NCBI GenBank assembly: GCA_002269645.1
Contig: NIVC01001763.1
Coordinates: 62,001-126,000 of the forward strand
Length of the DNA stretch: 64,000 nucleotides
Source of the DNA: Macrostomum lignano
Taxonomy: Eukaryota
Direction: 5' to 3'
Positions 1,071 to 58,400 of the stretch are shown here, in pieces; position 1 is the stretch's first letter, and each line of letters begins with the position of its first letter. The position numbers and the translations under genes are program-made. The notes beneath the pieces are model-generated. The model worked only from the letters and a program-made list of their open reading frames with translations, did no database searches and was not told the DNA's origin.

Positions 1071-1154
1071 GTTTAAAGGCGTGAAGAGATATATTGAGAG
1101 CGAAAAAAGAAAATGATAACCCTTCTGAAGCCTTCCGGTTCGCTCCATCCGCAG

Positions 1155-1885
1155 GTAGTCAAGATGCTATTCGTGGTAGTGACAATGTTCGCTTTCCTGT
1201 GGCTGCCTTACCGCCTGATGGTCGCCTACAACAGCTTCGCCGCCGCGGATCGCCGCCTCAACTCCGAGTGGTTCGTGGCCGTGAGTCGCCTGCTGATCTT
1301 TGTCAATTCGGCCATCAATCCGGTGATCTACAATGCCATGTCGGGAAAATTCCGGCGCGAATTCAAACGTCTCCTTCGATGCTCCGGTAGATTCTTATTG
1401 CTTAAATTGAGTTACATTTTGAAATTACTTGGTTAAAAGCTGTGGAGAACGTTTGTGCCTCCGTCACGGACGACCAGAAGTGAAAATCAATCAGAGTGAA
1501 ATTTTTAATGGGCTTTAGGGAAAATGAATACCTCTTTGTTATTTCTATCAGGACTCCGATTTATCAAGCGAAATTGCTTTGATTACTTTTACGACATTTT
1601 AGCTCGCTCGTAGAATCCATTAAATTTAATCACACCCGAGGAAAATAAGCATGCAATTCTACTTTTACAATTTGTCACGATTCAATGAAATTAAAATTAA
1701 AAAATGCTTCAATCTATGCAGGGAGCCGCGGCTTGAATGTTGGAAAGGCCCCGCGCGTCCACAACGGCAGCCCCTGCAGCCACTCGGCCGCTAAGCCGGA
1801 GCTCTCAGGCGGCGACGCCAATGATGGCAATGTTCAGCAGCTGCGGGAGATGTTGCGCCGCATGGAGGGTGCCAGATTCGGTTGA
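1155..1885 (+). CDS. TRHR: Thyrotropin-releasing hormone receptor-like class A GPCR, last coding exons (TM6-TM7 and C-tail); 5' part lies upstream of the window
   Basis: Exon 1155-1386 (acceptor ccgcAG, donor GT at 1387, phase 1) encodes VVKMLFVVVTMFAFLWLPYRLMVAYNSF...NSAINPVIYNAMSGKFRREF, matching the TRHR TM6 WxPYR, TM7 NSAINPVIY and helix 8. Phase-compatible exon 1722-1885 ends ...GARFG*. Terminal exon choice is less certain than the TM exon. Confidence 0.85.
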
Positions 1886-7717: not shown

Positions 7718-8408
7718 TAAGGATCTGGGAGGCTGACCAAGCAACTGAGGATCTGGGAGGCTGGCCCAGCAACTGAGGATCTGGGAGGCTGACCAAGCAA
7801 CTGAGGATCTGGGAGGCTGGCCCAGCAACTGAGGATCTGGGAGGCTGGCCCAGCAACTGAGGATCTGGGAAGCTGGCACAGCAACTGGCACTCTGGGAGG
7901 CTGGCCCAGCAACTGAGGATCTGGGAGGCTGGCCCAGCAACTGAAGATCTGATAGACTGGCCCAGCAAATGGGGATCTGGGAGGCTGACCCAGCAACTGG
8001 TACTATGGGAGGCTGGCCAAGCAACTGAGGATCTGCGAGGCTGGCCCAGCAACTGAGGATCTGGGAGGCTGGCCCAGCAACTGAGGATCTGGGAGGCTGG
8101 CCCAGCAACTGAGGATCTGCGAGGCTGGCCCAGCAACTGAGGATCTGGGAGGCTGGCCCAGCAACTGAGGATCTGCGAGGCTGGCCCAGCAACTGAGGAT
8201 CTGGGAGGCTGGCCCAGCAACTGGGGATCTGGGAGGCTGGCCCAGCAACTGAGGATCTGGGTGGCTGGCCCAGCAACTGAGGATCTGGGAGGCTGGCCCA
8301 GCAACTGACGATCTGGGAGGCTGGCCCAGCAACTGAGGATCTGGGAGGCTGGCCCAGCAACTGAGGATCTGGGAGGCTGGCCCAGTAACTAAGGATCTGG
8401 GAGGCTGG
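7718..8408. repeat. 28-bp minisatellite, ~24 copies
   Basis: Unit gaggatctgggaggctggcccagcaact; the same family occurs at 13870-14215. Confidence 0.95.
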
Positions 8409-9139: not shown

Positions 9140-9675
9140 AGGGGATGAGTCAGGGGATGAGTCAGGGGAGAGTCAGGGGATAAGTCAGGGGAGAGTCAGG
9201 GGATGAGTCAGGGGAGAGTCAGGGGATAAGTCAGGGGAGAGTCAGGGGATAAGTCAGGGGAGAGTCAGGGAGAGAAGAGTCAGGGGATAAGTCAGGGGAT
9301 AAGTCAGGGGAGAGTCAGGGGATAAGTCAGGGGAGAGTCAGGGGATAAGTCAGGGGAGAGTCAGGGAGAGAAGAGTCAGGGGAGAATAAGGGGAGAGTCA
9401 GGGGATAAGTCAGGGGAGAGTCAGGGAGAGAAGAGTCAGGGGAGAGTAAGGGGAGAGTCAAGGGATAAGTCAGGGGAGAGTCAGGGGAGAGTCAGGGGAT
9501 AAGTCAGAGAGTCAGGGGATAAGTGAGGGGAGAGTCAGAGGATAAGTCAGAGTCAGGGGATAGTCAGGAGATAAGTCAGGGGAGAGTAAGGGGAGAGTCA
9601 GAGGATAAGTCAGAGTCAGGGGAGAGTCAGGAGATAAGTCAGGGGAGAGTCAGGGGAGAGTCAGGGGAGAGGACA
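9140..9675. repeat. 13-14-bp purine-rich minisatellite
   Basis: Unit gagtcagggga(gag/taa). Confidence 0.9.
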
Positions 9676-10144
9676 ACACAAATCAGTCAGTCAGAAAGCA
9701 GCCAGCACAGGGGATGATGCCCAAGTGACTGACGCTTCACAAATAAAACGGTTTAAAACAGCCTGAAATCCAGGAATGCAGCACCAGTGAAAAAGTTGCG
9801 CATACAAAAGCGTCGTGAAATTTCAAAATTTTAATAAATTGAAGTCAAGCTAATATTAAACAAATGCTTTGTAAATGTAAATCAATAACAGTAGTAGAAA
9901 AAGGTTAATTAACAAAAATACCTGACCTATAATATTATTATAACCGGGAGATAACTATAGATTATAAATGTAGAAAATTGGTTATTAAAGTACATAAAAA
10001 TGCAAAACGCCAAGTCAATAAAAGCATTTTTAATGCATTGTAGTGCATGATAGTAAAGTTATTTATTTATTTATTTATTCTTTGGCTCTGCCCGCCAATC
10101 AGTGTGAAGTTCCCGCACACAGCCGCTGCTCTCGGTGAGACCAG

Positions 10145-13100
10145 CTAGCGACCCTGGCCGGTCACGGCGCCAGCATAAGAGCGGCCTGACGGAGCTCCGG
10201 CCTGCCGCTGCTGCTGCTGCTGCGGCGTCGGCAGCGACTTGGACGAAGCCGGCAGCGGTGGGGCGTCAGCAGCTCGATTGTTCACCGTCAGCGGCCGACG
10301 GTCGGGCAGGTCGCCAGAGGCGGACGCGGACTTTGTCGGGTCGGCCAGCTTGTTGGCGGCTACAGCGGCGAAAGTGGCGCGATTTGAAATTGCGCGCGCC
10401 TCCGAAGCTGAATTCTCCAACTCTGCAGCTTCAGGCTTCTTAACGACGGACTCGCCTGAATTAGCTTCAGGCTTCTTAACGACGGACTCGCCTGAATTAG
10501 CTTCAGGCTTCTTGGCGGCGGACTCGCCTGAAGCTTCATGCTTCTTGGCGGCGGATTCGCCTGAAGCTTCAGGCTTCTTTGCGGCGGATTCGCCTGAAGC
10601 TTCAGGCTTCTTAGCGGCGGATTCGCCTGAAGCTTCAGGCTTCTTAGCGGCGAATTCGCCTGAAGCTTCAGGCTTCTTAGCGGCGGATTCGCCTGAAGCT
10701 TCAGGCTTCTTAGCGGCGGATTCGCCTGAAGCTTCAGGCTTCTTGGCGGCGGATTCGTCTGAAGCTTCAGGCTTCTTGGCGGCGGCTTGAGGCTTTTTAG
10801 AAGCGCTTTTAGCTTTTTTCATAGATTTTTTCGAATTGTTGTCGCGTTTTGCCTTCGGCGCCTTCGTCTGAGCCGACGCTGGTCGTTCGGCAGACTTTGA
10901 CGCTGCCGACCTGCCACGGCCGCTGCCGCTATTGCCGCTGCAACTGCGCGGCAGCCTCAGCAGAGGCCGCGGCGGGCGAGGAATCTGCCGCAGCATTGAC
11001 ATCGGCTGCTGCTGCTGCTGCTGCTGCGGCCCGGGAGCCGTTGGGAACTTCGGCGACGAGGAGGCACGAAAACGCGGAACCTGCGGTCGCTGGCGGAACT
11101 GCTGATGATGCGGATTCTGGAACTGATGCTGCTGCCGCTGCGGAGGCGACGACTTGCTTGGAGCGGCAGCGTCGGCGCCGTTGGCGGAGGTCGCGACCAG
11201 TCGGCCGGCGAATTTCTCGTAGCCGGAGCGGCCGCGATTCTCCAGGGTGCGCTGGACTCGCTCGACCAGGCGCTGCATGGGCGGCACCAGCTGCTGCTCT
11301 TCCAGGCGCCTGGCGGAGGAGGAGGGAGCCAACGTTAAATGAATCGCCAACCAAGGCATAAACTGTTACAGACAGGATAACAGCAACTCAAGAGACTGTT
11401 ACAGACAGGAAAACAGCAACTCAAGAGGCTGTTACAGACAGGATAACAGCAACTCAAGAGGCTGTTACAGACAGGATAACAGCAACTCAAGAGGCTGTTA
11501 CAGACAGACAGGATAACAGCAACTCAAGAGGCTGTTACAGACAAAATAACAGCAACTCAAGAGGCTGTTACAGACAAAATAACAGCAACTCAAGAGGCTG
11601 TTACAGACAAAATAACAGCAACTCAAGAGACTGTTACAGACAGGAAAACAGCAACTCAAGAGGCTGTTACAGACAAAATAACAGCAACTCAAGAGGCTGT
11701 TACAGACAGACAGGATAACAGCAACTCAAGAGGCTGTTACAGACAGACAGGATAACAGCAACTCAAGAGGCTGTTACAGACAAAATAACAGCAACTCAAG
11801 AGGCTGTTACAGACAAAATAACAGCAACTCAAGAGACTGTTACAGACAGGAAAACAGCAAGGGCTCACTTGAAAGCGGGCAGCTGCTGCACCAATTTAGC
11901 CTTGCGCATCCCGTCCAGGTTGCGAGCGAAGCAGGCCGTGAACAAATCGTGGTCCTTGGCCAAGTTAAGCGCCGTCCGATAGAAGGGCTCCTCCGGTTCG
12001 GACACTCGTGAATAGGTTCGGCCAGCATTCTCTCCGGACACCGGACAGGGCAGGCTGACCCGGGCGCCGGGAAACGGATCCTCGCGGCCGCCCCGGTCCA
12101 GCAGGCGGCCGGTGAGGACGCAGACGGCGCTGGAAGCGAAGAAGCCGATGGTGGCGTACAGGCGGACCAGGCCGCAGAACTGCTCACCCAGCTGCTCTGT
12201 GCTCAGCGGCTCCGGCTGCCATTTGCGCAACGCCTCGGACACCTCGGATTTGCGATGGCCTCGGGCCAGGGCGCGAACTACGGACGGCGGTACCAGGCCG
12301 CCTGCGGCAGAGAGGACATGTGTTGATGTGAATAAACAAAGTGGCAGTGAGTCAGTGGGTCAATAATTCAGTGGGTCAATAATTCAGTGAGTCAATGATT
12401 TAGAAGGTCAATGATTCAGTGGGTCAATGACTTAATAGTGAGTCAATGATTCAATAGGTCAATGATTCAGTGGGTCAATGACTTAATAGTGAGTCAATGA
12501 TTCAATAGGTCAATGATTCAGTGGGTCAATTATACAGTGGGTCGATGATTCAGTGGGTCAATGACTTAGTAGTGAGTCAATGATTCAATAGGTCAATGAT
12601 TCAGTGGGTCAATGATTCAATAGGTCAATGATTCAATGGGTCAATGAATTGGTAGGTCAATGATTCAGTGGGTCAATTATACAGTGGGTCAATTAAAGTG
12701 GGTCAAGAGTGGGTCAATGAGTCAGTAGGTGAATGATTTATAAGGTCAATTATACAGTGGGTCACTGAGTGTGTCAATGATTCAGGGGTCAAGAGTGGGT
12801 CAACTAAAACGTGGGTCAGTGAGTGGGTCAATGAGTGGGTCATCAAGGCCGCACACTCACCCTGCTCCATGTGAAACAGCACCAGCAGGGCCACAGCGTA
12901 GCCGGTCAGCGCTCCCTTCCGCCTAATAAGCTGCCTGGACAGCGCCCACTCTCTCGTTACAACGGTCAGCAGGCGAAAAGCTTCGCTGAGCGAGGCCAGG
13001 CCGTTCAACAGGGCCGCGGCTCGCCTATGCTGCTGGCCGCCTCTGCCCAGCCTGACGGAGCAGCGCAGGTCAGCCTGCCGGTACACGCAGGTGACCACCG

Positions 13101-14515
13101 ACACCTGCCGGCTGTGCATTACCTGGACGCGGATGAATTCGCCTTCGCGACGCTGCAGCAAGCCAAAGATTTGGTCCGCCCGCTCGCGGTCGCGGCTGGC
13201 CGCGTCGGCCTGCGGAGCGGCTTCCGCTGCGGTGGCCGCATTGGCACCCGTTGGATCGTCATCCGGGATCTGCGGGGGGGGAAGAGGGGGAGCGGAGCAT
13301 TGAGTTTGGTAGCTGGTTCGTCTGAGCGGGACCTGTGAGGCTGAACTTGAGGATCTGTGAGGCTGAACTTGAGGATCTGTGAGGCTGAACTTGAGGATGT
13401 GAGGTTGACTTGAGGATCTGGGAGGCTGAACTTGAGGATCTGGGAAGCTGAACTTGAGGATCTGGGAGGCTGAACTTGAGGATCTGTGAGGCTGAACTTG
13501 AGGATCTGGGAGGCTGAACTTGAGGATCTGGGAAGCTAAACTTGAGGATCTGGGAGGCTGACTTGAGGATCTGGGAGGCTGACTTGAGGATCTGGGAGCC
13601 TGAACTTGAGGATGTGGGAGGCTGAACTTGAGGATCTAGGAGGCTGAACTTGAGGATGTGAGGCTGAACTTGAGGATCTGGGAGGCTGAACTTGAGGATG
13701 TGAGGCTGAACTTGAGGATGTGAGGCTGAACTTGAGGATGTGAGGCTGAACTTGAGGATGTGGGAGGCTGAACTTGAGGATGTGAGGCTGAAATTGAGGA
13801 TGTGAGGCTGAACTTGAGGATGTGGGAGGCTGAACTTGAGGATCTAGGAGGCTGAACTTGAGGATCTGGGAGCCTGGTGGCGACTCAGCAACTGAGGATC
13901 TGTGAGGCTGGCCCAGCAACTGAGGATCTGCGAGGCTGGCCCAGCAACTGAGGATCTGGGAGGCTGGCCCAGCAAATGGGCATCTAGGAGGCTGGCCAAG
14001 CAACTGGGGATCTGGGAAGCTGGCCCAGCAACTGAGGATCTGGGAGGCTGGCCAAGCAACTGGGGATCTGGGAGGCTGGCCCAGCAACTGAGGATCTGGG
14101 AGGCTGGCCCAGCCACTGAGGATCTGGGAGGCTGGGCAAGCAACTGGGGATCTGGGAGGCTGGCCCAGCAACTGAGGATCTGGGAGGCTGGCCCAGCAAC
14201 TAGGGATCTGGGAGATAACATCCCAAATAAACATGCTTAAAAGTGCGGCACACCGCGTGCAAGAACTCGCAAAGCTAAGGACAGAAGCCTCACCTCAATG
14301 GAGAGATCCACACTGGAATTCTTGGAGGCGATGCCGCTGGCCGAGGAGCCGACCAAGTGCACCGTGGCCTTGGGCAGGGTCTCCGACACCAGCTCGGTGA
14401 GTCGGTCGATGGCCAGCTGTCGCTGGGCGGCCTCCTCAGCCGACAGCAAAATGCAGTTATAAAACGCCTGCAGTTGCTCGCCCAGGCTGCGGTTGGACAT
14501 GTACTCAGTGCTCAT
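10145..14515 (-). CDS. Non-canonical poly(A)/poly(U) polymerase (GLD-2/TUT family) fold, predicted catalytically inactive, with low-complexity C-terminal tail; ~742 aa
   Basis: Exons 14515-14294, 13269-12861, 12301-11869, 11309-10145; all junctions GT-AG with matching phases 0/1/2; total 2229 nt. Motifs: HLVGSSASGIASKNSSVDL (GS loop), REWALSRQL...LTGYAVALLVLFHMEQ (PAP-associated helix), LPCPVSGENAGR (NRM position). AATAAA on the minus strand about 70 nt after the stop. Confidence 0.85.
10430..10795 (-). repeat. Coding minisatellite, 33/36-bp unit (AAKKPEASGES / VVKKPEANSGES), ~11 copies
   Basis: In frame within the last exon of the NTase gene. Confidence 0.9.
11362..11860. repeat. 33-bp intronic minisatellite (NTase intron 3)
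   Basis: Unit ctgttacagacaggataacagcaactcaagagg. Confidence 0.93.
12345..12840. repeat. Degenerate ~16-bp intronic minisatellite (NTase intron 2)
   Basis: Unit agtgggtcaatgattc. Confidence 0.88.
13335..14215. repeat. Compound 22-bp plus 28-bp intronic minisatellite (NTase intron 1)
   Basis: gaggctgaacttgaggatctgg (13335-13870) followed by gaggctggcccagcaactgaggatctgg (13870-14215). Confidence 0.93.
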
Positions 14516-14694
14516 GGCTGGCGGGCTGCGAGGCTTTCTTAGAAAATGAGGAAGGAGAAAACATACTGATTTTTAAATGGGAGCACTTCCCCTAGTCTAA
14601 GTTCCAAATATTCTCTCTATTCACTATTGTTAAAAGGCAAAGCTTTTTAAATCCACAAATTCTTTTAATTGCACTATTAAGAGAATTATGCCTA

Positions 14695-15045
14695 TAGCAA
14701 TTCTTAGAAACACACAGCTTCAACCACAGCAATTCTTAGAAACACACAGCTTCAACTACAGCAATTCTTAGAAACACACAGCTTCAACTACAGCAATTCT
14801 TAGAAACACACAGCTTCAACTACAGCAATTCTTAGAAACACACAGCTTCAACTACAGCAATTCTTAGAAACACACAGCTTTAACTACAGCAATTCTTAGA
14901 AACACACAGCTTCAACCACAGCAATTCTTAGAAACACAGTTTCAACTACAGCAATTCTTAGAAACACACAGCTTCCCCTATTGCAATTCTTAGAAACACA
15001 CAACTTCCCCTATTGCAATTCATAGAAACACACAGCTTCCCCTAA
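14695..15045. repeat. 32-bp minisatellite, ~11 copies
   Basis: Unit cagcaattcttagaaacacacagcttcaacta. Confidence 0.92.
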
Positions 15046-16077: not shown

Positions 16078-19000
16078 TTATTTCCCAACGTCTTCTTTCA
16101 GCGTGACAGTTCGATTAAAGATAAGCCGGCCAGGCGGGCTGGAGTCCTGATCCAGATAAAAATAGCCCAGCCGCTCGAACTGCAGGCGGCGCTGAATGGC
16201 GGCAGCAGTCAGCAGGTAGCGATCGGCCAGGGCGCCGGGCTTCACCGCCAGAGAGTTCGGATTCATGGCCGCTATGAGGCCGTCGGGATGCTCCTCGGGT
16301 TCTTCATGGTGAACAGCTGCTCGTATAAGCGGACCTCCACCTGGATTGGATATTGTGTGACAGACAGAGTCGTTGCAGGTAACCCAGGTAAAAAAGAAAA
16401 GAAGTGACTCTGGACGACTCTAAAACACGACGCGATGTCACGGTACAAGTCGCCAAAAAGTAGCCTAAGAGTCAATTTGAAGCCTTTTATTGTCTGTGAC
16501 TATGAAACGACTCTTGGGCCGTAAATTTGCACTTTAAAGCCCACAGCAGACATTTATTTCAATTTTTCTCTTGCCGCAAGAAAGGGGGTTGTTCTTTCTT
16601 CAGAGTTGTTAGCCTAGTGGTTGGAGCGTCGGGCTCACGACTTGAAGGTTGGGGGTTCGATTCCCGATCCCACTGGAACAGTTTGTGTCCTTGAGCAAGA
16701 CACTCAACTCTGCATTGCTTCAGTTCACGCAGCTGTAAAATGGGTGCCAGCATTAGCAGGGGGTAATTGAGGGTGAGTGTGGCCGTATGCAGCTTTAAAG
16801 ATGCGCCGCGCAATAGCTGCGGCTGAGCCTTCGGTTGCACAACTGGCCCAATTGGGACAGGGTGTTAAAAATTGTTATTATTATTATCATTATATTGGAC
16901 CAACACTACGAAAATAGTTTTCACTTTCTTTGCTTGCTACTAAATAAGTAGCAAGCGGATTTTATCATCTTTATTCGCAATTAGGCCCGATTCCCGCTCT
17001 CACCTGCACAGGATCCGCCACCCAATGCACAAAGCATTTCGGCTTGGCCGGCAGGCTGTCCAACGGCAGACAGGCCACTCGGAGCTCGGACACCTGTCCG
17101 GCAGCGTTCCGGACAACCTGACGCACAGCGATGGCCACATTGGCGTGCTTCAGGCCGACTGGCTGGTCCTCGGTGAGCCGTTTGAACCCGGCGCCAGCGC
17201 CCGCCTTGCCGCCGTCGCGAAAATCTTCTCTCTCCAAGTAGAGCACGCCGGATGAGGCGGAGAAGCTGGCAATGGAATGCGAGCCCCGCTCCGGACTGGC
17301 CGGATAGTCTGGCACCGTCAGGGCGGCCGATTTGACGGCGTCCAGGCCTTCAACTATGGTGACCTTCAGCGGATCGAGTACAACCATGGTGCGCGGCGCC
17401 GATGTGTTAAGGATCTCTCTGGTGCAGGCGTCAAGGAGGCTGGGATCGATGTAGGCCGATGCCATGGTGACGCCAACCTTGGCGGCGAATAGGTTCACAG
17501 CTTCTGGCGGGACACCGCGGCGGCGCAGCGCTGTGAGGGTGAACAGCCTGGGATCGTCCCAGTCAGCTACAGCTTTCTTCTGCACCAGGTTGAGAATCTT
17601 CCGCTTGGACATGACCGTGTTGCAGACGTTGAGCCGGCCGTACTCCCATTGCACCGGGCAGTACAGGTCCAGCGCGTTGCACAGCCAGTAATAGGAGGAC
17701 CGGCGGTTCTGGAACTCCTGCGATTGTTGTTCACAGATGGGGGATGAGATTTGCTTGCGCGGTTGCTATGCGGTTTATAATAAGATAACTGCAGCCAGAT
17801 GAGGGATCATTGAGGGAGGCGTCAGACAGCTGAAGGATCATGGAGGGGACACTAGGACATGAATAAGTATGGAGGGGGACATTAGACACATGAAGGATCA
17901 TGGAGGGGGCATCAGACACATGAAGGATCATGGAGGGGGCATCAGACACCTGAAGGATCATGGAGGGGACATCAAACAGGGAGCAATAGCATGGAGGGGG
18001 CAATAGCCCCAAACGCCCCTAAAGGCTCACCTTGGTGCACAGAGAGTGAGTAATGTTCTCAATGGAGTCGCACAAGCAGTGGGTGTAGTCATAGGTGGGA
18101 TAGATGCACCACTTGCTGCCAGTCCGGTGGTGCCGGGCATATTTGATCCTGTAAGCCACGGGATCCTGCTTGGAGTCCTCCATAGTGAGCCGCATTCTCA
18201 GGCAGGCCTCGCCCTCCGCGTACATGCCGGCCCGCATCGCCCTGAACAGCTGCAGCGACTCCTCGGCTGGCCGATCTCGCCAAGGCGACGGCGGCGGGTT
18301 GTGGCCCTTTAGCTGGTCTGGCGACTGATGGCACACGTAGGCCTTGCCGCGCATGATGAGGCTCTCAGCCCACTCGTACAGCTGGTCGAAGTTGTCCGAC
18401 GCGTACGTCACCTGGTTGATGGAAGGGGTGTGCGGGCTTGGAGTTAGGCGTTGGAGTGACGAGAGCAGTGAATTTGGTGACCCCAGAGTGACGAGAGCAG
18501 TGAATTTGGTGACCCCAGAGTGACGAGAACAGAGAATTTGGTGAACCGGAGTGACCAGAAAAGTTTAAATCGGCGTCGGAGTGACGAGAACAGTGAATTA
18601 GGGATCGGAGTGACAAGACAGTAGTCACAACTGGCTAATAAAGTTCCACCAACCTTATAAGGCGTGTAGCCGAGCCACTCCACTATGTCACGAATGGCTA
18701 CAAAGAATTTCTCCTCCTCTTTCTCCGGATTCGTGTCGTCATATCTGAAATTTTAACAAAGCGAGGGGATTCTGGATAGGGTTCAGGGCGATTTTGGATA
18801 GGGTTCAGGGCGATTTTGGATAGGGTTCAGGACGACTCTGGATAGGGTTCAGGGCGATTCTGGATAGGGTTCAGGTCGAATCTTGATAGGGTTCAGGAGC
18901 GATTATGGATAGGGTTCAGGGGCGATTATGGATAGGGTTCAGGGCGATTATGGATAGTGATCGGGGCAATTTTGGATAGGGTTCAGGGGCGATTCTGGAT

Positions 19001-20824
19001 AGGGTTCAGGGTGATTCTGGATAGGGTTCAGGGGCGATTCTGGATAGGGTTCAGGGCGATTCTGGATAGGGTTCAGGGCGACTCTGGATAGGGTTCAGGG
19101 TGATTCTGGATAGGGTTCAGGGGCGATTCTGGATAGGGTTCAGGGCGATTCTGGATAGGGTTCAGGGGCGATTATGAGTAGGGTTTAGGGGCTTCTAGCA
19201 ATCAGCGCACCTGAGATAGCAGTGCCCGTTGTGAGCTCGCGCGTAGCCGAAGTTAAAATTGATGGCTTTAGCGTGCCCGATATGGAGAATTCCGTTGGGC
19301 TCGGGAGGGAATCTCGTGAATACCTTGCCACCAGTCTGCTCGAGGTGCCGCCCGAGCAGAAATCGAGTCCGCGGCGTCATCACGTAGCCGTCAGTAAGGT
19401 AATTTTCGCCCGGCTTGTGAAATTTGGCCGCGTCGCCGCTGATCATCTGGTCGGCCAGGGAGCGGGTCTCTTCGCGGAAGACCTCCGCGTTCCCGTTGGC
19501 GGCGGCTGCGACTGCCGCTGGCTTGCCTCTGGCAGCTGGTTGCTTAGCAACTAAAGAGGCGTTGGCGGCGCCGGTTCGGTCAGCGTCGGTCTTGGGGCCA
19601 AGCAAGTGAAGGATTTGCACCTCGAATTCGCATTTCACCTGCTTGCCGTCGGCCCATTTCAGGTTGGATCTTTGATAGCGGGGTAAAGGTGGGTAGGATT
19701 GCGTGGGACAGGATTGGCTTTAAACATTTCTTGGCTAGATATCCTACTAGATCTGAGCTAGATAACCTACTAGATCTCAGCTAGATATCCAACTAGATCT
19801 CAGCTAGATATCCAACTAGATCTCAGCTAGATATCCAACTAGATCTGAGATAGATATCCAACTAGATCTGAGATAGATATCCAACTAGATCTCAGCTAGA
19901 TATCCAACTAGATCTCAGCTAGATATCCAACTAGATCTCAGCTAGATTTCCAACTAGATCTGAGATAGATATCTTACAAGATCTGAGATAGATATCTAAC
20001 TAGATCTCAGCTAGATATCCAACTAGATCTGAGATAGATATCCAACTAGATCTGAGATAGATATCCAACTAGATCTGAGATAGATATCCAACTAGATCTG
20101 AGATAGATATCCAACTAGATCTGAGATAGATATCCAACTAGATCTGAGATAGATATCCAACTAGATCTGAGATATATATCCAACTAGATCTGAGATAGAT
20201 ATCCAACTAGATCTGAACTAGATATCCAACTAGATCTGAGATAGATATCCAACTAGATCTGAGATAGATATACAACTAGATCTGAACTAGGTAATTAGAC
20301 ACAAGCACTACCTACGCCAAGACCCCCCAGAGAAGCTGTATGGACACAAACCTGGCCTCTCCGAGAAGCTTATTTATTCCAAACGCATAACGCTGTGCCA
20401 GCAGCTCCTGCTTATGCTTATTAATCACTTCTTCTACCGCCCGTTCGATATCTTCGGGAGTGATTGACACTCCGATGCCGCAGGCGGCTTTGAAGGCGTC
20501 CAAGTCGCCGCTGCCGATTTGCTTGAGGCAAAAATCGCAGGCGGCTGTTACCTGAGCCTCCGTGGCCAGATCGCCGTTAATAATGTGGTTGACAATCAGT
20601 TCATGACCGGCAAATGCCTGCTTTTTCAGCTTAGTGCCAGTGTGGTAAATCAAATTTCCCTGCACTTTACTCAACTCCTTGGAGCCCAGCTTGTCCTTGG
20701 CGCAGCGGACCAAGGCCACTAAGCGCTCGGTGAGGTCTTTGTTTCGCATTGTTTCTTCAATCTTAGGCCCAGATAGGCCTAGACTGGCCAGACATTCATT
20801 TGCCATGCTTGTTGAAGTGCTCAT
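16078..20824 (-). CDS. QARS1: Glutamine--tRNA ligase (cytoplasmic glutaminyl-tRNA synthetase), ~793 aa if the 1-nt deletion in the last exon is restored
   Basis: Exons 20824-20352, 19669-19211, 18744-18654, 18411-18031, 17717-17004, 16340-16078; GT-AG junctions, phases consistent. Motifs [18 protein letters not shown] (HIGH), [71 protein letters not shown]. Confidence 0.97.
16603..16895 (+). mobile_element. CORE-type (MIR-like) tRNA-derived SINE in QARS intron 5, antisense to the gene
   Basis: A box TAGCCTAGTGG at 16610-16620, B box GGTTCGATTCC at 16654-16664, CORE-like tgtgtccttgagcaagacactcaactc...cagttcacgcagctgtaaaatggg at 16683-16744, (ATT)n tail at ~16875-16895. Confidence 0.8.
17795..17990. 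repeat. ~30-bp intronic minisatellite (QARS intron 4)
   Basis: Unit catgaaggatcatggagggggcatcagaca. Confidence 0.85.
18452..18620. repeat. ~32-bp intronic minisatellite (QARS intron 3)
   Basis: Unit gagtgacgagagcagtgaatttggtgacccca. Confidence 0.8.
18765..19195. repeat. 22-23-bp intronic minisatellite (QARS intron 2)
   Basis: Unit ggatagggttcagggcgattct. Confidence 0.92.
19730..20290. repeat. 23-bp intronic minisatellite (QARS intron 1)
   Basis: Unit ctagatctgagatagatatccaa. Confidence 0.93.
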
Positions 20825-51057: not shown

Positions 51058-52460
51058 AAGCAGAACTCGCTGATAAAAGCTCAAAAGAAAATGCTGAAAA
51101 TCTTTGAATTATTCCTAAACCCAAATGCTGCACTGCATCAATGCTTTTTTGTCGTAAAATTTCAATGTGTCTCAGTGTTATGCGCGTGTAAAATTTGTAA
51201 GAATAATACATTTCCAAACGCTTTACAATCTGCGCATTGTTGTCTCTCAATCCAAGTTTCTTTTTTCTGGCAGGCGACAGCTGATAAAACTGCGTATCGG
51301 ATCGGGGCGCTGCGAGAAGGAGAAATAGAGGTCAAGTGGCTCCAGATCCCACTACAAAGATTGGCGCAGCTCAATGGAATTTACGCGCCGCTCATGATTA
51401 ACGGCCTGTGTTAAGACATCGCGGCCCAACAGGGGGGTCACTGGGTCAGGAGCTGCTGCAGACAAAGAGGCGATTTATAGATAACGTCTCCTGATTGTTG
51501 ATCTGACAGGGTGAACACTTCGACAAGTGGATGGATTCTCTTAGACCAGAGCCCGGACTCTCGCACCGAGCCAACATTAATTTGGGGCCAAGGGGGTCGG
51601 GTTGTACGATTGTAAATCCCTGTGTGACCGCTTGCCACAGCTCCGCTGCAAACTATCTGATCTTGAATTCGATGGCAACAATCGCTGCTGTCTCAAAGCC
51701 TTTCCGCGGCAGCAATCAGGATACAGTTTGTTCCTGACAATTCTGTTTGTGACGCAACACCCTCGGCTTCAAATTGAACCAGTAGATGCAGATGCAATCA
51801 ACCCCCCAGTAAACGAAGACTGTGAGGAGGGGGATCGAGCCAGCGAGGGATTGGGGATTCTATACACCCCTAGTGTCCCAATTTCTCGCACAGGCACGCA
51901 AAATGCAATTTCCAACTCGAGCGGGGGGTGACCGCGTGAGAAGATTTCATTACGCCTGTTGCTTTGAGGCCTGAGAGACTGCACGAGGTCGCTAGAGAAT
52001 GAGAAGAGAAGGCCGAGTCCAGTTTGGTGTCAAAGTCAAGCGAAAGTGCGCGGACTCGGTCGGCTGGTGCTGCTGGCTGGAGGACCCTGGGAGCAGAAGG
52101 GAAAGATCCATAGAGCCAGACCGCGACCCGCGAACTTCACTACTTAATCCATTTTAACTTTACGTATTCAGATGGATAACTTTCATATGCCTCTTGGTGG
52201 TTGAGAAACAGAAACATTGAATATAAGTGCTGTGCACCGTCGCTTCATTGAAATTTAGTGTAAAATAGATGAATAATGGTTGCTATAGCCTACTTAAAGT
52301 AGGAAAATAGCAATTTACTTTTGTGACGCATCATTCTTATGCGAATTTTTTTGTCTCAAGGGTCGCATCTATTGCTTCAGCAGCGGGACTGACTTCTACT
52401 TGAAGTAATAAGAAAAAATGCCGCAAAACTTGCCTACTCCACGACTCTCCCAAATTCTGA

Positions 52461-55400
52461 CTCTCCCCAACTCTTTCCAACTCTCCCCGACTCTTCCCGA
52501 CTCTTCCCAACTCTCCTCAACTCTCCCCAACTCTTTCCAACTCTCCCCAACTCTCCCCAACTCTCCCCGACTCTCCCCAACTCTTCCCAACTCTCCCTGA
52601 CTCTTCCCGACTCTTCCCAACTCTCCCCGACTCTTCCCGACTCTCCCCAACTCTTCCCAACTCTTCCCAACTCTTCCCAACTCTTTCCAACTCTCCCCAA
52701 CTCTTCCCAACTCTCCCCAACTCTCCCCAACTCTTCCCAACTCTCTCCAACTCTCCCCAACTCTCCCCGACTCTCTCCAACTCTCCCCAACTCTTTCCAA
52801 CTCTTTCCAACTCTCCCCAACTCTCCCCAACTCTTTCCAACTCTCCCCAACTCTTCCCAACTCTTCCCAACTCTCACCAACTCTCCCCAACTCTTCCCAA
52901 CTCTTCCCAACTCTCCCCAACTCTCCCCAACTCTTCCCAACTCTCTCCAACTCTCCCCAACTCTCCCCGACTCTCTCCAACTCTCCCCAACTCTTTCCAA
53001 CTCTTTCCAACTCTCCCCAACTCTCCCCAACTCTCCCCAACTCTCCCCAACTCTCCCCAACTCTCCCCAACTCTCCCCAACTCTTTCCAACTCTTTCCAA
53101 CTCTCCCCAACTCTTCCCAACTCTTCCCAACTCTCACCAACTCTCCCCAACTCTTCCCAACTCTTCCCAACTCTCCCCGACTCTCCCCGACTCTCCCCAA
53201 CTCTTCCCAACTCTTCCCAACTCTTCCCAACTCTCCCCAACTCTTCCCAACTCTTCCCAACTCTCCCCGACTCTCTCCAACTCTTTCCAACTCTTTCCAA
53301 CTCTCCCCAACTCTCCCCAACTCTTCCCAACTCTCCCCGACTCTCTCCAACTCTTCCCAACTCTCCCCGACTCTTCCCGACTCTTCCCAACTCTCCCCAA
53401 CTCTTTCCAACTCTTTCCAACTCTCCCCAACTCTCCCCAACTCTCCCCAACTCTTTCCAACTCTCCCCAACTCTTTCCAACTCTTCCCAACTCTTTCCAA
53501 CTCTCCCCAACTCTTCCCAACTCTTCCCAACTCTTTCCAACTCTTCCCAACTCTTTCCAACTCTCCCCAACTCTTCCCAACTCTTTCCAACTCTCCCCAA
53601 CTCTTCCCAACTCTTCCCAACTCTCCCCGACTCTCTCCAACTCTTTCCAACTCTTTCCAACTCTCCCCAACTCTCCCCAACTCTTTCCAACTCTTTCCAA
53701 CTCTTCCCAACTCTCCCCAACTCTCCCCAACTCTTCCCAACTCTCCCCGACTCTCCTCAACTCTTCCCAACTCTCTCCAACTCTCCCCAACTCTCCCCGA
53801 CTCTTCCCAACTCTTCCCAACTCTCCCCGACTCTTCCCGACTCTTCCCAACTCTCCCCAACTCTTCCCAACTCTTCCCAACTCTCCCCAACTCTTCCCAA
53901 CTCTTCCCAACTCTCCCCGACTCTCTCCAACTCTTTCCAACTCTTTCCAACTCTCCCCAACTCTCCCCGACTCTCTCCAACTCTTCCCAACTCTTCCCAA
54001 CTCTCTCCAACTCTCCCCAACTCTCCCCGACTCTTCCCAACTCTTCCCAACTCTCCCCGACTCTTCCCGACTCTTCCCAACTCTCCCCAACTCTTCCCAA
54101 CTCTTTCCAACTCTCCCCAACTCTCCCCAACTCTCCCCAACTCTTTCCAACTCTCCCCAACTCTCCCCAACTCTCCCCAACTCTTTCCAACTCTCACCAA
54201 CTCTCCCCAACTCTCACCAACTCTCCCCAACTCTCCCCGACTCTTCCCAACTCTCCCCAACTCTCCCCAACTCTCTCCAACTCTCCCCAACTCTTTCCAA
54301 TTCTCACCAACTCTCCCCAACTCTCCCCAACTCTTTCCAACTCTTCCCAACTCTCCCCGACTCTTCCCGACTCTTCCCAACTCTCCCCAACTCTTCCCAA
54401 CTCTTTCCAACTCTCCCCAACTCTCCCCAACTCTCCCCAACTCTTCCCAACTCTTCCCAACTTTCCCCAACTCTTCCCAACTCTTCCCAACTCTTTCCAA
54501 CTCTCCCCAACTCTTCCCAACTCTTTCCAACTCTCCCCAACTCTCCCCAACTCTCCCCAACTCTCCCCAACTCTCCCCAACTCTCCCCAACTCTTTCCAA
54601 CTCTCACCAACTCTCCCCAACTCTCACCAACTCTCCCCAACTCTTTCCAACTCTTTCCAACTCTCCCCAACTCTTTCCAACTCTCACCAACTCTCCCCAA
54701 CTCTCACCAACTCTCCCCAACTCTCCCCGACTCTTCCCAACTCTTCCCAACTCTCCCCAACGCTCCCCAACTCTCCCCAACTCTTTCCAACTCTCCCCAA
54801 CTCTTCCCAACTCTCCCCGACTCTCTCCAACTCTCCCCAACTCTCCCCGACTCTTCCCAACTCTTCCCAACTCTCCCCAACGCTCCCCAACTCTCCCCAA
54901 CTCTTTCCAACTCTCCCCAACTCTTCCCAACTCTCCCCGACTCTCTCCAACTCTCCCCAACTCTTTCCAACTCTCCCCAACTCTCCCCAACTCTTCCCAA
55001 CTCTTCCCAACTCTTCCCAACTCTCCCCAACTCTTTCCAACTCTCCCCGACTCTTCCCGACTCTTCCCAACTCTCCCCAACTCTCCCCAACTCTTTCCAA
55101 CTCTCCCCAACTCTTCCAAACTCTTCCCAACTCTCCCCAACGCTCCCCAACTCTTCCCAACTCTTTCCAACTCTCCCCAACTCTTCCCAACTCTTCCCAA
55201 CTCTTTCCAACTCTTCCCAACTCTTTCCAACTCTTTCCAACTCTTTCCAACTCTTTCCAACTCTCCCCAACTCTTCCCAACTCTTCCCAACTCTCCCCGA
55301 CTCTCTCCAACTCTTTCCAACTCTTTCCAACTCTCCCCAACTCTCCCCAACTCTTTCCAACTCTTTCCAACTCTTCCCAACTCTCCCCAACTCTCCCCAA

Positions 55401-58400
55401 CTCTTCCCAACTCTCCCCGACTCTCCTCAACTCTTCCCAACTCTCTCCAACTCTCCCCAACTCTCCCCGACTCTCCCCAACTCTTCCCAACTCTTCCCGA
55501 CTCTTCCAGACTCTTCCCAACTCTTCCCAACTCTTCCCAACTCTTCCCAACTCTCCCCAACTCTTCCCAACTCTTCCCAACTCTCCCCGACTCTCTCCAA
55601 CTCTTTCCAACTCTTTCCAACTCTCCCCAACTCTCCCCAACTCTTTCCAACTCTTCCCAACTCTTCCCAACTCTCTCCAACTCTCTCCAACTCTCCCCGA
55701 GTCTTCCCAACTCTTCCCAACTCTCCCCGACTCTTCCCGACTCTTCCCAACTCTCCCCAACTCTTTCCAACTCTCCCCAACTCTCCCCAACTCTCCCCAA
55801 CTCATCCCAACTCTTCCCAACTTTCCCCAACTCTTCCCAACTCTTCCCAACTCTCCCCGACTCTCTCCAACTCTCCCCAACTCTTTCCAACTCTCCCCAA
55901 CTCTCCCCAACTCTCACCAACTCTCCCCAACTCTTTCCAACTCTTCCCAACTCTTCCCAACTCTCTCCAACTCTCTCCAACTCTCCCCGAGTCTTCCCAA
56001 CTCTTCCCAACTCTCCCCGACTCTTCCCGACTCTTCCCAACTCTCCCCAACTCTTTCCAACTCTCCCCAACTCTCCCCAACTCTCCCCAACTCATCCCAA
56101 CTCTTCCCAACTTTCCCCAACTCTTCCCAACTCTTCCCAACTCTCCCCAACTCTCCCCAACTCTCCCCAACTCTTTCCAACTCTCACCAACTCTCCCCAA
56201 CTCTCACCAACTCTCCCCAACTCTCCCCGACTCTTCCCAACTCTCCCCAACTCTCCCCAACTCTCTCCAACTCTCCCCAACTCTTTCCAACTCTCACCAA
56301 CTCTCCCCAACTCTCCCCAACTCTTTCCAACTCTTCCCAACTCTTCCCAACTCTCTCCAACTCTCCCCAACTCTCCCCGACTCTTCCCAACTCTTCCCAA
56401 CTCTCCCCGACTCTTCCCGACTCTTCCCAACTCTCCCCAACTCTTCCCAACTCTTTCCAACTCTCCCCAACTCTCCCCAACTCTCCCCAACTCTTCCCAA
56501 CTCTTCCCAACTTTCCCCAACTCTTCCCAACTCTTCCCAACTCTCCCCGACTCTCTCCAACTCTCCCCAACTCTTTCCAACTCTCCCCAACTCTCCCCAA
56601 CTCTCCCCAACTCTCCCCGACTCTCCTCAACTCTTCCCAACTCTCTCCAACTCTCCCCAACTCTCCCCGACTCTCCCCAACTCTTCCCAACTCTCCCCGA
56701 CTCTTCCCGACTCTTCCCAACTCTCCCCAACTCTTCCCAACTCTTCCCAACTCTCCCCAACTCTTCCCAACTCTTCCCAACTCTCCCCGACTCTCTCCAA
56801 CTCTTTCCAACTCTTTCCAACTCTCCCCAACTCTCCCCGACTCTCTCCAACTCTTCCCAACTCTTCCCAACTCTCTCCAACTCTCCCCAACTCTCCCCGA
56901 CTCTTCCCAACTCTTCCCAACTCTCCCCGACTCTTCCCGACTCTTCCCAACTCTCCCCAACTCTTCCCAACTCTTTCCAACTCTCCCCAACTCTCCCCAA
57001 CTCTCCCCAACTCTTTCCAACTCTCCCCAACTCTCCCCAACTCTTTCCAACTCTCACCAACTCTCCCCAACTCTCACCAACTCTCCCCAACTCTCCCCGA
57101 CTCTTCCCAACTCTCCCCAACTCTCCCCAACTCTCTCCAACTCTCCCCAACTCTTTCCAATTCTCACCAACTCTCCCCAACTCTCACCAACTCTCCCCAA
57201 CTCTTTCCAACTCTTCCCAACTCTTCCCAACTCTCTCCAACTCTCCCCAACTCTCCCCGACTCTTCCCAACTCTTCCCAACTCTCCCCGACTCTTCCCGA
57301 CTCTTCCCAACTCTCCCCAACTCTTCCCAACTCTTTCCAACTCTCCCCAACTCTCCCCAACTCTCCCCAACTCTTCCCAACTCTTCCCAACTTTCCCCAA
57401 CTCTTCCCAACTCTTCCCAACTCTTTCCAACTCTCCCCAACTCTTCCCAACTCTTTCCAACTCTCCCCAACTCTCCCCAACTCTCCCCAACTCTCCCCAA
57501 CTCTCCCCAACTCTCCCCAACTCTTTCCAACTCTCACCAACTCTCCCCAACTCTCACCAACTCTCCCCAACTCTTTCCAACTCTTCCCAACTCTCCCCAA
57601 CTCTCCCCAACTCTTTCCAACTCTCCCCAACTCTTTCCAACTCTCACCAACTCTCCCCAACTCTCACCAACTCTCCCCAACTCTCCCCGACTCTTCCCAA
57701 CTCTTCCCAACTCTCCCCAACGCTCCCCAACTCTCCCCAACTCTTTCCAACTCTCCCCAACTCTTCCCAACTCTCCCCGACTCTCTCCAACTCTCCCCAA
57801 CTCTTTCCAACTCTCCCCAACTCTCCCCAACTCTTCCCAACTCTTCCCAACTCTTCCCAACTCTCCCCAACTCTTCCCAACTCTCCCCGACTCTTCCCGA
57901 CTCTTCCCAACTCTCCCCAACTCTCCCCAACTCTTTCCAACTCTCCCCAACTCTTCCAAACTCTTCCCAACTCTCCCCAACGCTCCCCAACTCTTCCCAA
58001 CTCTTTCCAACTCTCCCCAACTCTTCCCAACTCTCCCCAACTCTTCCCAACTCTCCCCGACTCTCCTCAACTCTCCCCAACTCTCCCCAACTCTTCCCAA
58101 CTCTTCCCAACTCTCCCCGACTCTCTCCAACTCTCCCCAACTCTCCCCAACTCTCCCCAACTCTCCCCAACTCTCCCCAACTCTTTCCAACTCTCACCAA
58201 CTCTCCCCAACTCTCACCAACTCTCCCCAACTCTCCCCGACTCTTCCCAACTCTCCCCAACTCTCCCCAACTCTCTCCAACTCTCCCCAACTCTTTCCAA
58301 CTCTCACCAACTCTCCCCAACTCTCCCCAACTCTTTCCAACTCTTCCCAACTCTTCCCAACTCTCTCCAACTCTCCCCAACTCTCCCCGACTCTTCCCAA

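What the first reader, a model, noticed from the sequence alone, without database searches (positions are those of the whole stretch)
11869..14515. Stand-alone pseudo-TUTase: GLD-2/TUT fold with the catalytic triad DxD...D changed to SxD...S
Seen: the spliced protein reads HLVGSSASGIASKNSSVDLSI and VSVVTCVYRQADLRCSVRL. Known: GLD-2/PAPD4 has FLVGSSLNGFGTRSSDGDLCL and VPIVKFRDKVSCVEFDLNV. Aligned without gaps, the first and third metal-binding Asp are both Ser, and the nucleotide-recognition loop (normally IEDPF...N) reads LPCPVSGEN. The gene is otherwise intact (4 exons, correct phases, poly(A) signal), so it looks like a maintained pseudo-enzyme and not a pseudogene. Dead NTase domains are known as the N-terminal module of TUT4/7, but there an active domain follows. 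Here the protein ends in a disordered tail. Inference: a non-catalytic RNA-binding scaffold or regulator of RNA 3' tailing. This is the strongest candidate for an undescribed system in this window.
Basis: partly seen in the sequence, partly recalled or inferred. Interest (0 to 1): 0.8.

Follow-up and report, generated by a model that had tools for sequence, protein, structure and literature searches.

The report
Stand-alone dead GLD-2-like nucleotidyltransferase, flatworm
This Macrostomum lignano flatworm gene encodes a protein folded like an RNA-tailing enzyme (GLD-2/TUTase type) that has lost two of its three metal-binding residues and carries a long basic disordered tail, so it is probably a conserved non-catalytic relative of those enzymes, but its function is untested.

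Summary
The minus-strand gene encodes a Cid1/GLD-2-type nucleotidyltransferase (NTase) fold (Pfam PF22600; AlphaFold pLDDT 80.6; best Foldseek match GLD-2). Its metal triad reads S68-x-D70...S145 instead of D-x-D...D. Each Ser codon is two base changes from Asp.

A fourth exon (11309-10145) adds a 387-residue basic, repeat-rich tail, giving 742 aa. The window is GenBank NIVC01001763.1, where the gene is annotated as a hypothetical protein.

Only one relative outside M. lignano was found among 1.84 billion representative proteins. It is an intronless RNA-seq contig, 37% identical, with the triad D-D-T, a complete N-terminus and a basic tail. The third carboxylate was therefore probably lost before the two lineages split. 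Synonymous sites are saturated while blocks of 70-85% amino-acid identity persist, which argues for purifying selection.

No zinc finger and no second NTase domain exist in the window or in the orthologue. The closest solved relative by family profile is GLD-2/TENT2. A link to the dead N-terminal domain of TUT4/7 is not supported by a tree.

Inactivity and any RNA-binding or regulatory role are inferred, not shown. I rate it a lineage-restricted new variant of a known kind, of moderate interest.

The parts
14294..14515 (-). Exon 1 (aa 1-74). ATG at 14515. Carries the hG[GS] motif (G56-S57, 14350-14345), S68 (AGT, 14314-14312) in place of the first catalytic Asp, and D70 (GAT, 14308-14306), the retained second Asp. 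Donor is GAG|GTGAGG.
   Evidence: residues 4-15 align with the orthologue P0003
13270..14293 (-). Intron 1 (phase 0), almost entirely tandem repeats: 22-bp x 25.7 (13329-13876) and 28-bp x 11.8 (13886-14214).
12861..13269 (-). Exon 2 (aa 75 to the first base of codon 211). Contains a low-complexity palm insertion, S145 (TCC, 13059-13057) in place of the third catalytic Asp, and the conserved block REWALSRQLIRRKGALTGY (R180, L184, Y198).
12302..12860 (-). Intron 2 (phase 1), mostly a 16-bp tandem repeat x 28 (12348-12792).
11869..12301 (-). Exon 3 (aa 211-355, central/PAP-associated-like lobe). Contains the degenerate nucleotide-recognition motif LPCPVSGENAGR (aa 294-305) and the family-specific insertion RVSEPEEPFYRTALNL. 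The donor AA|GTGAGC overlaps a TGA, so retaining intron 3 would end the protein at K355.
11310..11868 (-). Intron 3 (phase 2), mostly a 33-bp tandem repeat x 14.7 (11363-11860).
10145..11309 (-). Exon 4 (aa 355-742 plus stop TAG at 10147-10145). Encodes a 387-aa basic low-complexity tail (68 K/R against 37 D/E, pI 10.4), including an 11-aa repeat KKPEASGESAA about 10 times, encoded by a 33-bp tandem repeat at 10423-10785.
   Evidence: (identical to PAA64307.1)
10061..10078 (-). Overlapping AATAAA poly(A) signals about 67 nt downstream of the stop codon.

Best explanation
This is a real, spliced gene of Macrostomum lignano. It is probably expressed, because its GenBank annotation was built from a transcriptome assembly. 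It encodes a very divergent GLD-2/Cid1-family (TENT) nucleotidyltransferase-fold protein that has most likely lost catalysis and has been kept as a non-enzymatic protein.

Shown: the protein has the bilobal palm plus central-domain fold. The metal triad is S68/D70/S145. Further residues that in Cid1-type enzymes contact the NTP are changed. The second Lys of the KxWAK helix is L184, the Asn-Thr pair before the 'LL' helix is Ala-Ala, and the second Ser of LSSY is Gly. The Asp of the EDP motif is Cys. The orthologue, 37% identical, also lacks the third Asp. Three blocks lining the former active-site cleft are the best conserved parts: GS...NS.DL, REWAL.R.LIRRKGALTGY and PV.G.NAGR.YSR.S.PEEPF. 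Both proteins carry a long basic disordered tail.

Inferred: the remodelled cleft, which has gained R190-R191-K192, still binds a ligand, most plausibly an RNA 3' end or a phosphate-bearing group. The lysine-rich tail adds non-specific RNA affinity or directs localisation. The conserved but low-confidence SEPEEPF insertion is a candidate partner-binding motif. The protein would then act as a non-catalytic RNA-binding adaptor, or as a competitor or regulator of active tailing enzymes.
For: Fold: Pfam PF22600 scores 45.6 bits against a cut-off of 27. The AlphaFold2 model has pLDDT 80.6 and pTM 0.80. The top Foldseek hits are GLD-2/TENT2 6lbk/6lbj (E 2e-14, TM 0.76-0.78 on the target), then TUT1, Cid1, the TUT7 catalytic module and the TUT4 LIM. 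The family profile best matches rat GLD-2 in one stretch across both lobes (E 9e-18).

Degenerate site. Both Ser codons are two substitutions from Asp.

Maintenance: the ORF is intact with canonical splice sites. GenBank product PAA64307.1 equals my model from Q16 onward, and that annotation derives from an RNA-seq-guided transcriptome (PMC5730564). Orthologue P0003 sits on an intronless 2764-nt RNA-seq contig (E 1.9e-53, triad D/D/T). dN is 0.72 with dS saturated, and 92 of 124 identical residues use different codons. Identity is 70-85% in three blocks and about 0-30% elsewhere.

Stand-alone.

Basic tails: pI 10.35 and 9.96.
Against: No biochemical data exist, so inactivity is inferred from sequence. 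S68 is seen only in this one assembly. The orthologue keeps the DxD pair, so the ancestor may have retained partial function for longer. I could not inspect model coordinates to rule out a displaced acidic residue. The only conserved candidate, D141, lies at the hairpin turn four residues before S145 and aligns with the canonical turn Gly, so it is unlikely to compensate. RNA binding, partner binding, tissue expression and phenotype are all untested. With only one orthologue, a site-wise test of selection is impossible.
Confidence: 0.6

Rival explanations
1. It is still an active nucleotidyltransferase that uses an unconventional active site, for example one-metal catalysis through D70 plus a relocated acidic residue or substrate-assisted chemistry.
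For: The GS motif, D70, R180, Y198, N302 and R305 are retained, and the cleft-lining blocks are the most conserved parts. The orthologue keeps both Asp of DxD.
Against: Two of three carboxylates are Ser here, and the third is Thr in the orthologue. Loss of two of these carboxylates is the stated reason TUT4 NTD1 is considered inactive (PMC6488673). The equivalents of the triphosphate Lys and the ribose-contacting Asn-Thr are also lost. E74 and D77-79, just after the strand, are not conserved in the orthologue.
Confidence: 0.08
2. It is a young, functionless duplicate drifting towards pseudogene status. The active-site changes would then reflect relaxed constraint, not a new role.
For: The family is very divergent, with every relative outside it at E >= 1e-9. 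It is confined to M. lignano plus one sample. M. lignano has a highly duplicated genome (PMC5730564). The window protein has degenerated further than its orthologue (S against D at position 68; Pfam PAP_assoc is lost here but passes the cut-off in P0003).
Against: The 742-codon ORF is intact across four exons. Homologous architecture and 70-85% identical blocks persist although synonymous sites are saturated. The annotation is transcript-derived and the orthologue was recovered from RNA-seq.
Confidence: 0.1
3. It descends from the non-catalytic N-terminal NTase domain (NTD1 of the Lin28-interacting module) of a TUT4/7-like gene that lost its zinc finger and catalytic half. It would then work as that module does, as a docking surface for an RNA-protein complex.
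For: With the single sequence, the best PDB sequence hits are TUT4/TUT7, mostly through NTD1. An HMM built from 13 NTD1 domains scores the protein at 87 bits, against 43 bits for an HMM of the matching catalytic domains. In 11 of 13 two-domain relatives the N-terminal domain scores higher.
Against: An HMM of single-domain family members scores far higher, at 174 bits. In a neighbour-joining tree the family is monophyletic in 100/100 replicates but never sister to NTD1. The family profile matches GLD-2 best and in one piece. The recognition loop is one residue shorter than in TUTases, a gap that in A2 only the query, P0003 and the GLD-2-like P0016 carry. The degenerate positions differ: S/D/S here against D412/N414/R468 in TUT4. 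There is no C2H2 zinc finger.
Confidence: 0.12
4. It acts mainly through proteins rather than RNA. As a dead GLD-2 paralogue it would bind the RNA-binding partners that recruit active GLD-2 (as GLD-3, RNP-8 or CPEB do in other animals), or it would pair with an active enzyme, and so tune cytoplasmic polyadenylation.
For: The closest solved relative is GLD-2. From general knowledge, GLD-2 has no RNA-binding domain and depends on partners. The insertion YSR.S.PEEPF is conserved yet predicted disordered (pLDDT < 50 at residues 307-322), which is typical of a linear interaction motif.
Against: No partner is known, and orthology to GLD-2 is unresolved. The strongly basic tail points towards nucleic-acid binding.
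Confidence: 0.2

Closest known systems
GLD-2 / TENT2 (PAPD4) cytoplasmic poly(A) polymerase, Cid1 family
   Same: It has the same bilobal palm plus central-domain fold. GLD-2 is the best Foldseek match (6lbk/6lbj, E 2e-14) and the best family-profile match, in a single stretch across both lobes (E 9e-18). The nucleotide-recognition loop has the same length (P-x-x-G-x-N-x-x-R), one residue shorter than in TUTases. There is no recognisable RNA-binding domain.
   Different: The triad is S/D/S instead of D/D/D, and the EEP/EDP acid is Cys. The triphosphate Lys and the Asn-Thr pair are lost. A 16-residue insertion follows the NAGR motif. A 387-aa basic repeat tail is added. Sequence identity is only about 16-20%. 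Orthology is not resolved by a tree.
Non-catalytic NTase domain (NTD1) of the Lin28-interacting module of TUT4/TUT7
   Same: It is a Cid1-type fold that has lost two of three catalytic carboxylates and serves a non-enzymatic docking role (PMC6488673). It gives the top single-sequence PDB hits.
   Different: NTD1 is one module of a protein longer than 1400 aa, preceded by a C2H2 zinc finger and followed by an active catalytic module. The flatworm protein stands alone. The lost positions differ (D/N/R against S/D/S). The tree does not group them.
Other stand-alone NTase-fold pseudoenzymes: MiD49/MiD51 and the DZF domains of NF45/NF90 (from general knowledge, not tested here)
   Same: The concept is the same: an NTase fold without the catalytic residues, reused for ligand binding or dimerisation rather than catalysis.
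   Different: These belong to other branches of the NTase superfamily (cGAS/OAS-like), not to the Cid1/TENT branch. No sequence or Foldseek hit to them ranked among the top matches here.
Drosophila Trf4-2 (TENT4 paralogue listed as 'Inactive' in the metazoan TENT review PMC7988573)
   Same: It is a stand-alone TENT-family paralogue reported to lack activity.
   Different: It belongs to a different subfamily (TENT4). I did not check whether its triad is degenerate. It is unrelated in lineage.

Membership tests
Cid1 / TENT non-canonical nucleotidyltransferase family (fold membership) | Pol-beta-type NTase palm with the helix-turn hG[GS] motif | tested here: met
   Pfam PF22600 MTPAP-like_central scores 45.6 bits (cut-off 27) over aa 12-145. 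G56-S57 are invariant in alignment A2.
Cid1 / TENT non-canonical nucleotidyltransferase family (fold membership) | Central / PAP-associated lobe following the palm | tested here: met
   Pfam PF03828 is not detected in the window protein at E <= 10. It passes the cut-off in orthologue P0003 (23.2 against 22.6 bits). The AlphaFold model aligns over about 350 columns with GLD-2, TUT1 and Cid1 chains covering both lobes. The family profile aligns to GLD-2 through the NxxR motif.
Cid1 / TENT non-canonical nucleotidyltransferase family (as an enzyme) | Three metal-binding carboxylates, DxD on strand 2 and D on strand 5 | tested here: not met
   The positions read S68, D70, S145. The orthologue reads D, D, T.
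Cid1 / TENT non-canonical nucleotidyltransferase family (as an enzyme) | Template-independent nucleotide addition to RNA 3' ends | not testable with these tools
   This needs a biochemical assay.
GLD-2 / TENT2 subfamily | Closest relative by profile and structure, with the GLD-2-length recognition loop | tested here: met
   Rat GLD-2 is the top hit of family profile A3 (67.6 bits) and the top Foldseek hit. The one-residue gap in the loop is carried in A2 only by the query, P0003 and the GLD-2-like P0016.
GLD-2 / TENT2 subfamily | Phylogenetic placement inside the GLD-2 clade (orthology) | tested here: inconclusive
   In the neighbour-joining tree of 71 domains the family is monophyletic in 100/100 replicates, but its sister is an unstable long branch. 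All distances exceed 1.9 substitutions per site.
TUT4/7 Lin28-interacting module (nc-NTD) | N-terminal C2H2 zinc finger packed on the dead NTase domain | tested here: not met
   No zinc-finger Pfam hit in the window protein or in P0003. The P0003 transcript has an in-frame TGA 6 nt upstream of its ATG.
TUT4/7 Lin28-interacting module (nc-NTD) | An active catalytic module with zinc knuckles follows in the same polypeptide | tested here: not met
   tblastn and an HMM of 30 domains find no other NTase segment in the 64-kb window. The product ends in a low-complexity tail with a stop and poly(A) signals. P0003 has the same layout.
Pseudogene (non-functional relic) | Frameshifts, premature stops, lost splice sites, or neutral evolution | tested here: not met
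   The ORF is intact with GT-AG introns in matching phases. Amino-acid blocks are conserved although synonymous sites are saturated. The annotation is transcript-derived.

The most novel reading that the evidence does not exclude
A conserved, stand-alone dead GLD-2 paralogue of macrostomid flatworms that has been repurposed as a non-catalytic reader or blocker of RNA 3' ends, or as a decoy for GLD-2 partner proteins. It would then control cytoplasmic tailing, for example in the germline or in stem cells of a regenerating animal. To my knowledge this would be the first free-standing pseudoenzyme of the Cid1/TENT branch with a defined regulatory role.
Probability: 0.25. Interest if true: 0.6.

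Novelty: new variant of a known kind. Interest (0 to 1): 0.4.

Why it matters
Dead copies of enzymes often become regulators of the pathways their ancestors catalysed. Within the RNA-tailing (TENT/Cid1) family, the well-studied dead domain is the internal NTD1 module of TUT4/7. A free-standing dead GLD-2-like protein, conserved across species and joined to a basic disordered tail, would be a compact natural example of how a tailing enzyme becomes an RNA- or partner-binding factor. M. lignano is transgenic and RNAi-tractable, so the idea can be tested. The limits are clear. The family is so far seen only in M. lignano and one unidentified RNA-seq sample. It is a fast-evolving orphan branch, and nothing is known about its expression pattern or phenotype. 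It could also be a minor lineage-specific paralogue of little general consequence.

Tried and rejected
1. dN/dS against the orthologue: synonymous sites are saturated (NG86 dS undefined; LWL85 and YN00 failed), so only a qualitative statement is possible.

2. More family members: a single-sequence search of 5.8 billion proteins, a search with P0003 (nothing), a family-profile search and a full HMMER scan of 1.84 billion representatives returned only M. lignano fragments and P0003. Models P0002 and P0064 are frame-shifted artefacts of the older assembly.

3. Independent DNA for S68: exact look-ups of P0001, P0002 and the exon-1 ORF found nothing. The P0061 locus is the window itself.

4. Literature: no paper mentions Mlig004094, SRR26183987, or Macrostomum together with nucleotidyltransferase. 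A search for pseudoenzyme reviews was unhelpful.

5. Origin from TUT4/7 NTD1: suggested, but not supported by the tree, the family profile or the loop length.

6. PEEPF...N as the true 'EDPF...N' motif: rejected. MAFFT and the profile alignment place LPCPVSGENAGR on the canonical motif and treat RVSEPEEPFYRTALNL as an insertion. The model is low-confidence at residues 307-322.

7. D141 as a relocated catalytic acid: it aligns with the hairpin-turn Gly four residues before the catalytic position, so rescue is unlikely. I could not check this on coordinates.

8. The UniRef names 'Pex2_Pex12', 'ELM2' and 'DUF4149 domain-containing' for the fragments: no such Pfam hits.


Full report
**Gene model.** The finding lies on the minus strand. 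Translation and inspection of the junctions give four exons: 14515-14294, 13269-12861, 12301-11869 and 11309-10145. All three introns are GT-AG, in phases 0, 1 and 2, and the product is 742 aa. The stop codon is TAG at 10147-10145. Overlapping AATAAA signals follow about 67 nt downstream. The intron-3 donor AA|GTGAGC overlaps a TGA, so an intron-retaining transcript would end at K355. The spliced form adds a 387-residue tail.

**Source and annotation.** The window matches, base for base over the 24.3-kb fetched locus L002, GenBank NIVC01001763.1 of the Macrostomum lignano Mlig_3_7 assembly. There the gene is annotated as 'hypothetical protein BOX15_Mlig004094g2, partial' (PAA64307.1, 727 aa). 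That product equals my model from Q16 onward. The GenBank annotation was derived from an RNA-seq-guided transcriptome assembly (PMC5730564). The splice junctions and exon 4 therefore have indirect transcript support.

The three quoted peptide strings are present. Four alignments place S68, D70 and S145 on the canonical D, D, D positions. These are phmmer against 60 relatives, a 30-sequence MAFFT alignment, a family profile against GLD-2 chains and a PDB search. The context L-R-C-S-V-R-L matches the canonical h-x-C-D-I-x-h. In TUT4 NTD1 the same position is R468, within LLCRVS (PMC6488673). The Ser codons are AGT and TCC, each two substitutions from an Asp codon, so a single base error cannot explain them. 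S145 recurs in four UniProt fragments from the older assembly. S68 has no independent confirmation.

**Other active-site positions.** Other positions that, from my knowledge of Cid1 and TUT7 structures, contact the NTP are also changed in alignment A2:
- The second Lys of KxWAK is L184.
- The Asn-Thr pair before the 'LL' helix is Ala-Ala.
- LSSY reads LTGY.
- The acid of EDP is Cys296.

**Fold.** Pfam gives PF22600 (MTPAP-like central palm) at 45.6 bits, above its cut-off of 27. PAP_assoc is not detected. An AlphaFold2 model built on a 30-sequence alignment has mean pLDDT 80.6 and pTM 0.80. Confidence is low only at residues 307-322 and beyond residue 348. Foldseek against the PDB returns GLD-2/TENT2 first (6lbk/6lbj, E 2e-14, TM 0.76-0.78 on the target). 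TUT1, Cid1, the TUT7 catalytic module, the TUT4 LIM, CutA, URT1 and mtPAP follow, with alignments of about 350 columns spanning both lobes.

**Relatives.** Word-indexed searches of 5.8 billion proteins found only M. lignano fragments. A full HMMER scan of 1.84 billion representative proteins found one real relative, P0003 (866 aa, E 1.9e-53, 37% identity over aa 4-357). Every other hit had E >= 1e-9.

P0003 sits on a 2764-nt Logan contig from run SRR26183987. The ORF is uninterrupted, an Illumina adapter lies at one end, and an in-frame TGA lies 6 nt upstream of the ATG. It is therefore a complete mRNA-derived sequence from another organism, which I could not identify. Its triad is D, D, T. 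Its recognition motif is the less degenerate IMDPVTGTNAGR, and it passes Pfam PAP_assoc (23.2 against 22.6 bits) as well as PF22600. It too ends in a 521-residue basic tail (pI 9.96; window tail pI 10.35).

The third carboxylate was thus probably lost before the two lineages split. The first Asp and the EDP acid were lost later in the M. lignano line.

**Constraint.** Over 335 aligned codons dN is 0.72 and dS is saturated. Of 124 identical residues, 92 use different codons. Identity is very uneven. It reaches 70-85% in three blocks and falls to about 0-30% elsewhere. The blocks are around GS...NS.DL, REWAL.R.LIRRKGALTGY and PV.G.NAGR.YSR.S.PEEPF..TA.NL.KD. This is the signature of purifying selection on a folded protein, not of a decaying pseudogene. 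The conserved blocks are those that line the nucleotide/RNA cleft in active family members. The family-specific 16-residue insertion (RVSEPEEPFYRTALNL) is conserved yet modelled with pLDDT below 50. That pattern is typical of a linear interaction motif.

**Stand-alone status.** tblastn with the protein, and an HMM built from 30 family domains run against all six-frame fragments, found NTase similarity only in exons 1-3. The next gene upstream on the same strand is glutaminyl-tRNA synthetase. No zinc finger or other domain is detected in either family member.

**Which known family is closest.**
- With the single sequence, the best PDB hits were TUT4/TUT7, mostly through their dead N-terminal domain.
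- An HMM of 13 such NTD1 domains outscored an HMM of the paired catalytic domains, 87 against 43 bits.
- An HMM of single-domain relatives scored far higher, at 174 bits.
- A bootstrapped neighbour-joining tree kept the family monophyletic (100/100) but attached it to unstable long branches, never to NTD1.
- The two-sequence family profile matched rat GLD-2 best and in one piece (E 9e-18), aligning PVSGENAGR with PFDGTNTAR without a gap.
- In A2, that one-residue-shorter loop is carried only by the query, P0003 and the GLD-2-like P0016.

I therefore describe it as an orphan, fast-evolving GLD-2-like branch of the Cid1/TENT family. Its exact origin is unresolved.

**Mechanism.** Shown: the fold, the degenerate catalytic and NTP-contact residues, the conservation pattern, the basic disordered tail, and the stand-alone architecture. 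Inferred: the protein no longer transfers nucleotides. It uses the remodelled cleft (with conserved R190-R191-K192, Y198, N302 and R305) and the tail to bind RNA or partners. It would then act as a non-catalytic adaptor, competitor or regulator in RNA 3'-end metabolism. I put about 0.85 on 'catalytically dead and maintained' and about 0.4 on the specific RNA-binding or regulatory role, giving about 0.6 for the combined statement. The rivals, with their weights, are residual activity (0.08), a drifting duplicate (0.10), descent from TUT4/7 NTD1 (0.12), and a mainly protein-directed decoy (0.20, which overlaps the main view).

**Novelty and score.** Dead NTase folds are well known: TUT4/7 NTD1, and from general knowledge MiD49/51 and NF45/NF90. 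The main metazoan TENT review lists only Drosophila Trf4-2 as an inactive stand-alone paralogue. A conserved free-standing GLD-2-like pseudoenzyme with a basic repeat tail is a new variant of a known kind, not a new kind. Given the narrow phylogenetic range and the lack of any functional data, I score interest at 0.4.

Noticed in passing
window 11310-11868, 12302-12860, 13270-14293; also 14692-15039: All three introns of the gene consist almost entirely of tandem repeats: 33-bp x 14.7, 16-bp x 28, and 22-bp x 25.7 plus 28-bp x 11.8. A 32-bp x 10.9 array lies just upstream of the ATG.
   Followed up: partly
window 7739-8383 and 13886-14214: The 28-bp satellite of intron 1 (CAGCAACTGAGGATCTGGGAGGCTGGCC) recurs in the same orientation as a larger array about 2 kb beyond the gene's 3' end. 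Its translation produces long spurious ORFs.
   Followed up: partly
window 10423-10785: A 33-bp tandem repeat (10.8 copies, 94% matches) lies inside exon 4 and encodes the 11-residue repeat KKPEASGESAA. A tandem repeat is therefore part of the coding sequence.
   Followed up: partly
window 11865-11870: The intron-3 donor AA|GTGAGC overlaps an in-frame TGA, so intron retention would give a 355-aa tail-less core protein. Whether such an isoform exists is unknown.
   Followed up: no
window 14468-14515: The GenBank CDS is 5'-partial and starts at Q16 (14470), although a genomic ATG at 14515 adds 15 residues that align with the orthologue. The locus-tag suffix 'g2' and the same-strand GlnRS gene upstream suggest the second gene of a trans-spliced multi-gene transcription unit, a class described for M. 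lignano (PMC5730564). This is an inference.
   Followed up: partly
window 16559-20824 (minus strand): The upstream neighbour on the same strand is a glutaminyl-tRNA synthetase. Pfam finds tRNA_synt_1c_R1, the catalytic domain and the anticodon-binding domain.
   Followed up: partly
window 1113-1436 (plus strand): This ORF encodes the C-terminal part of a rhodopsin-family GPCR, including the NPxxY region (Pfam 7tm_1, E 1.4e-12).
   Followed up: no
window 52460-58935: A 6.5-kb array of a 10-bp satellite (ACTCTCCCCA, about 648 copies, 88% matches) causes the extreme GC skew of -0.75 to -0.95. A related CT-rich repeat lies at 9400-9670, just beyond the gene's 3' UTR.
   Followed up: partly
proteins P0001, P0002, P0064 (UniRef entries for fragments of this gene): UniRef names these fragments 'Pex2_Pex12', 'ELM2' and 'DUF4149 domain-containing protein'. 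Pfam scans of the full product and of P0002 find no such domains, so the names look spurious. P0002 and P0064 are frame-shifted models from the older assembly.
   Followed up: partly
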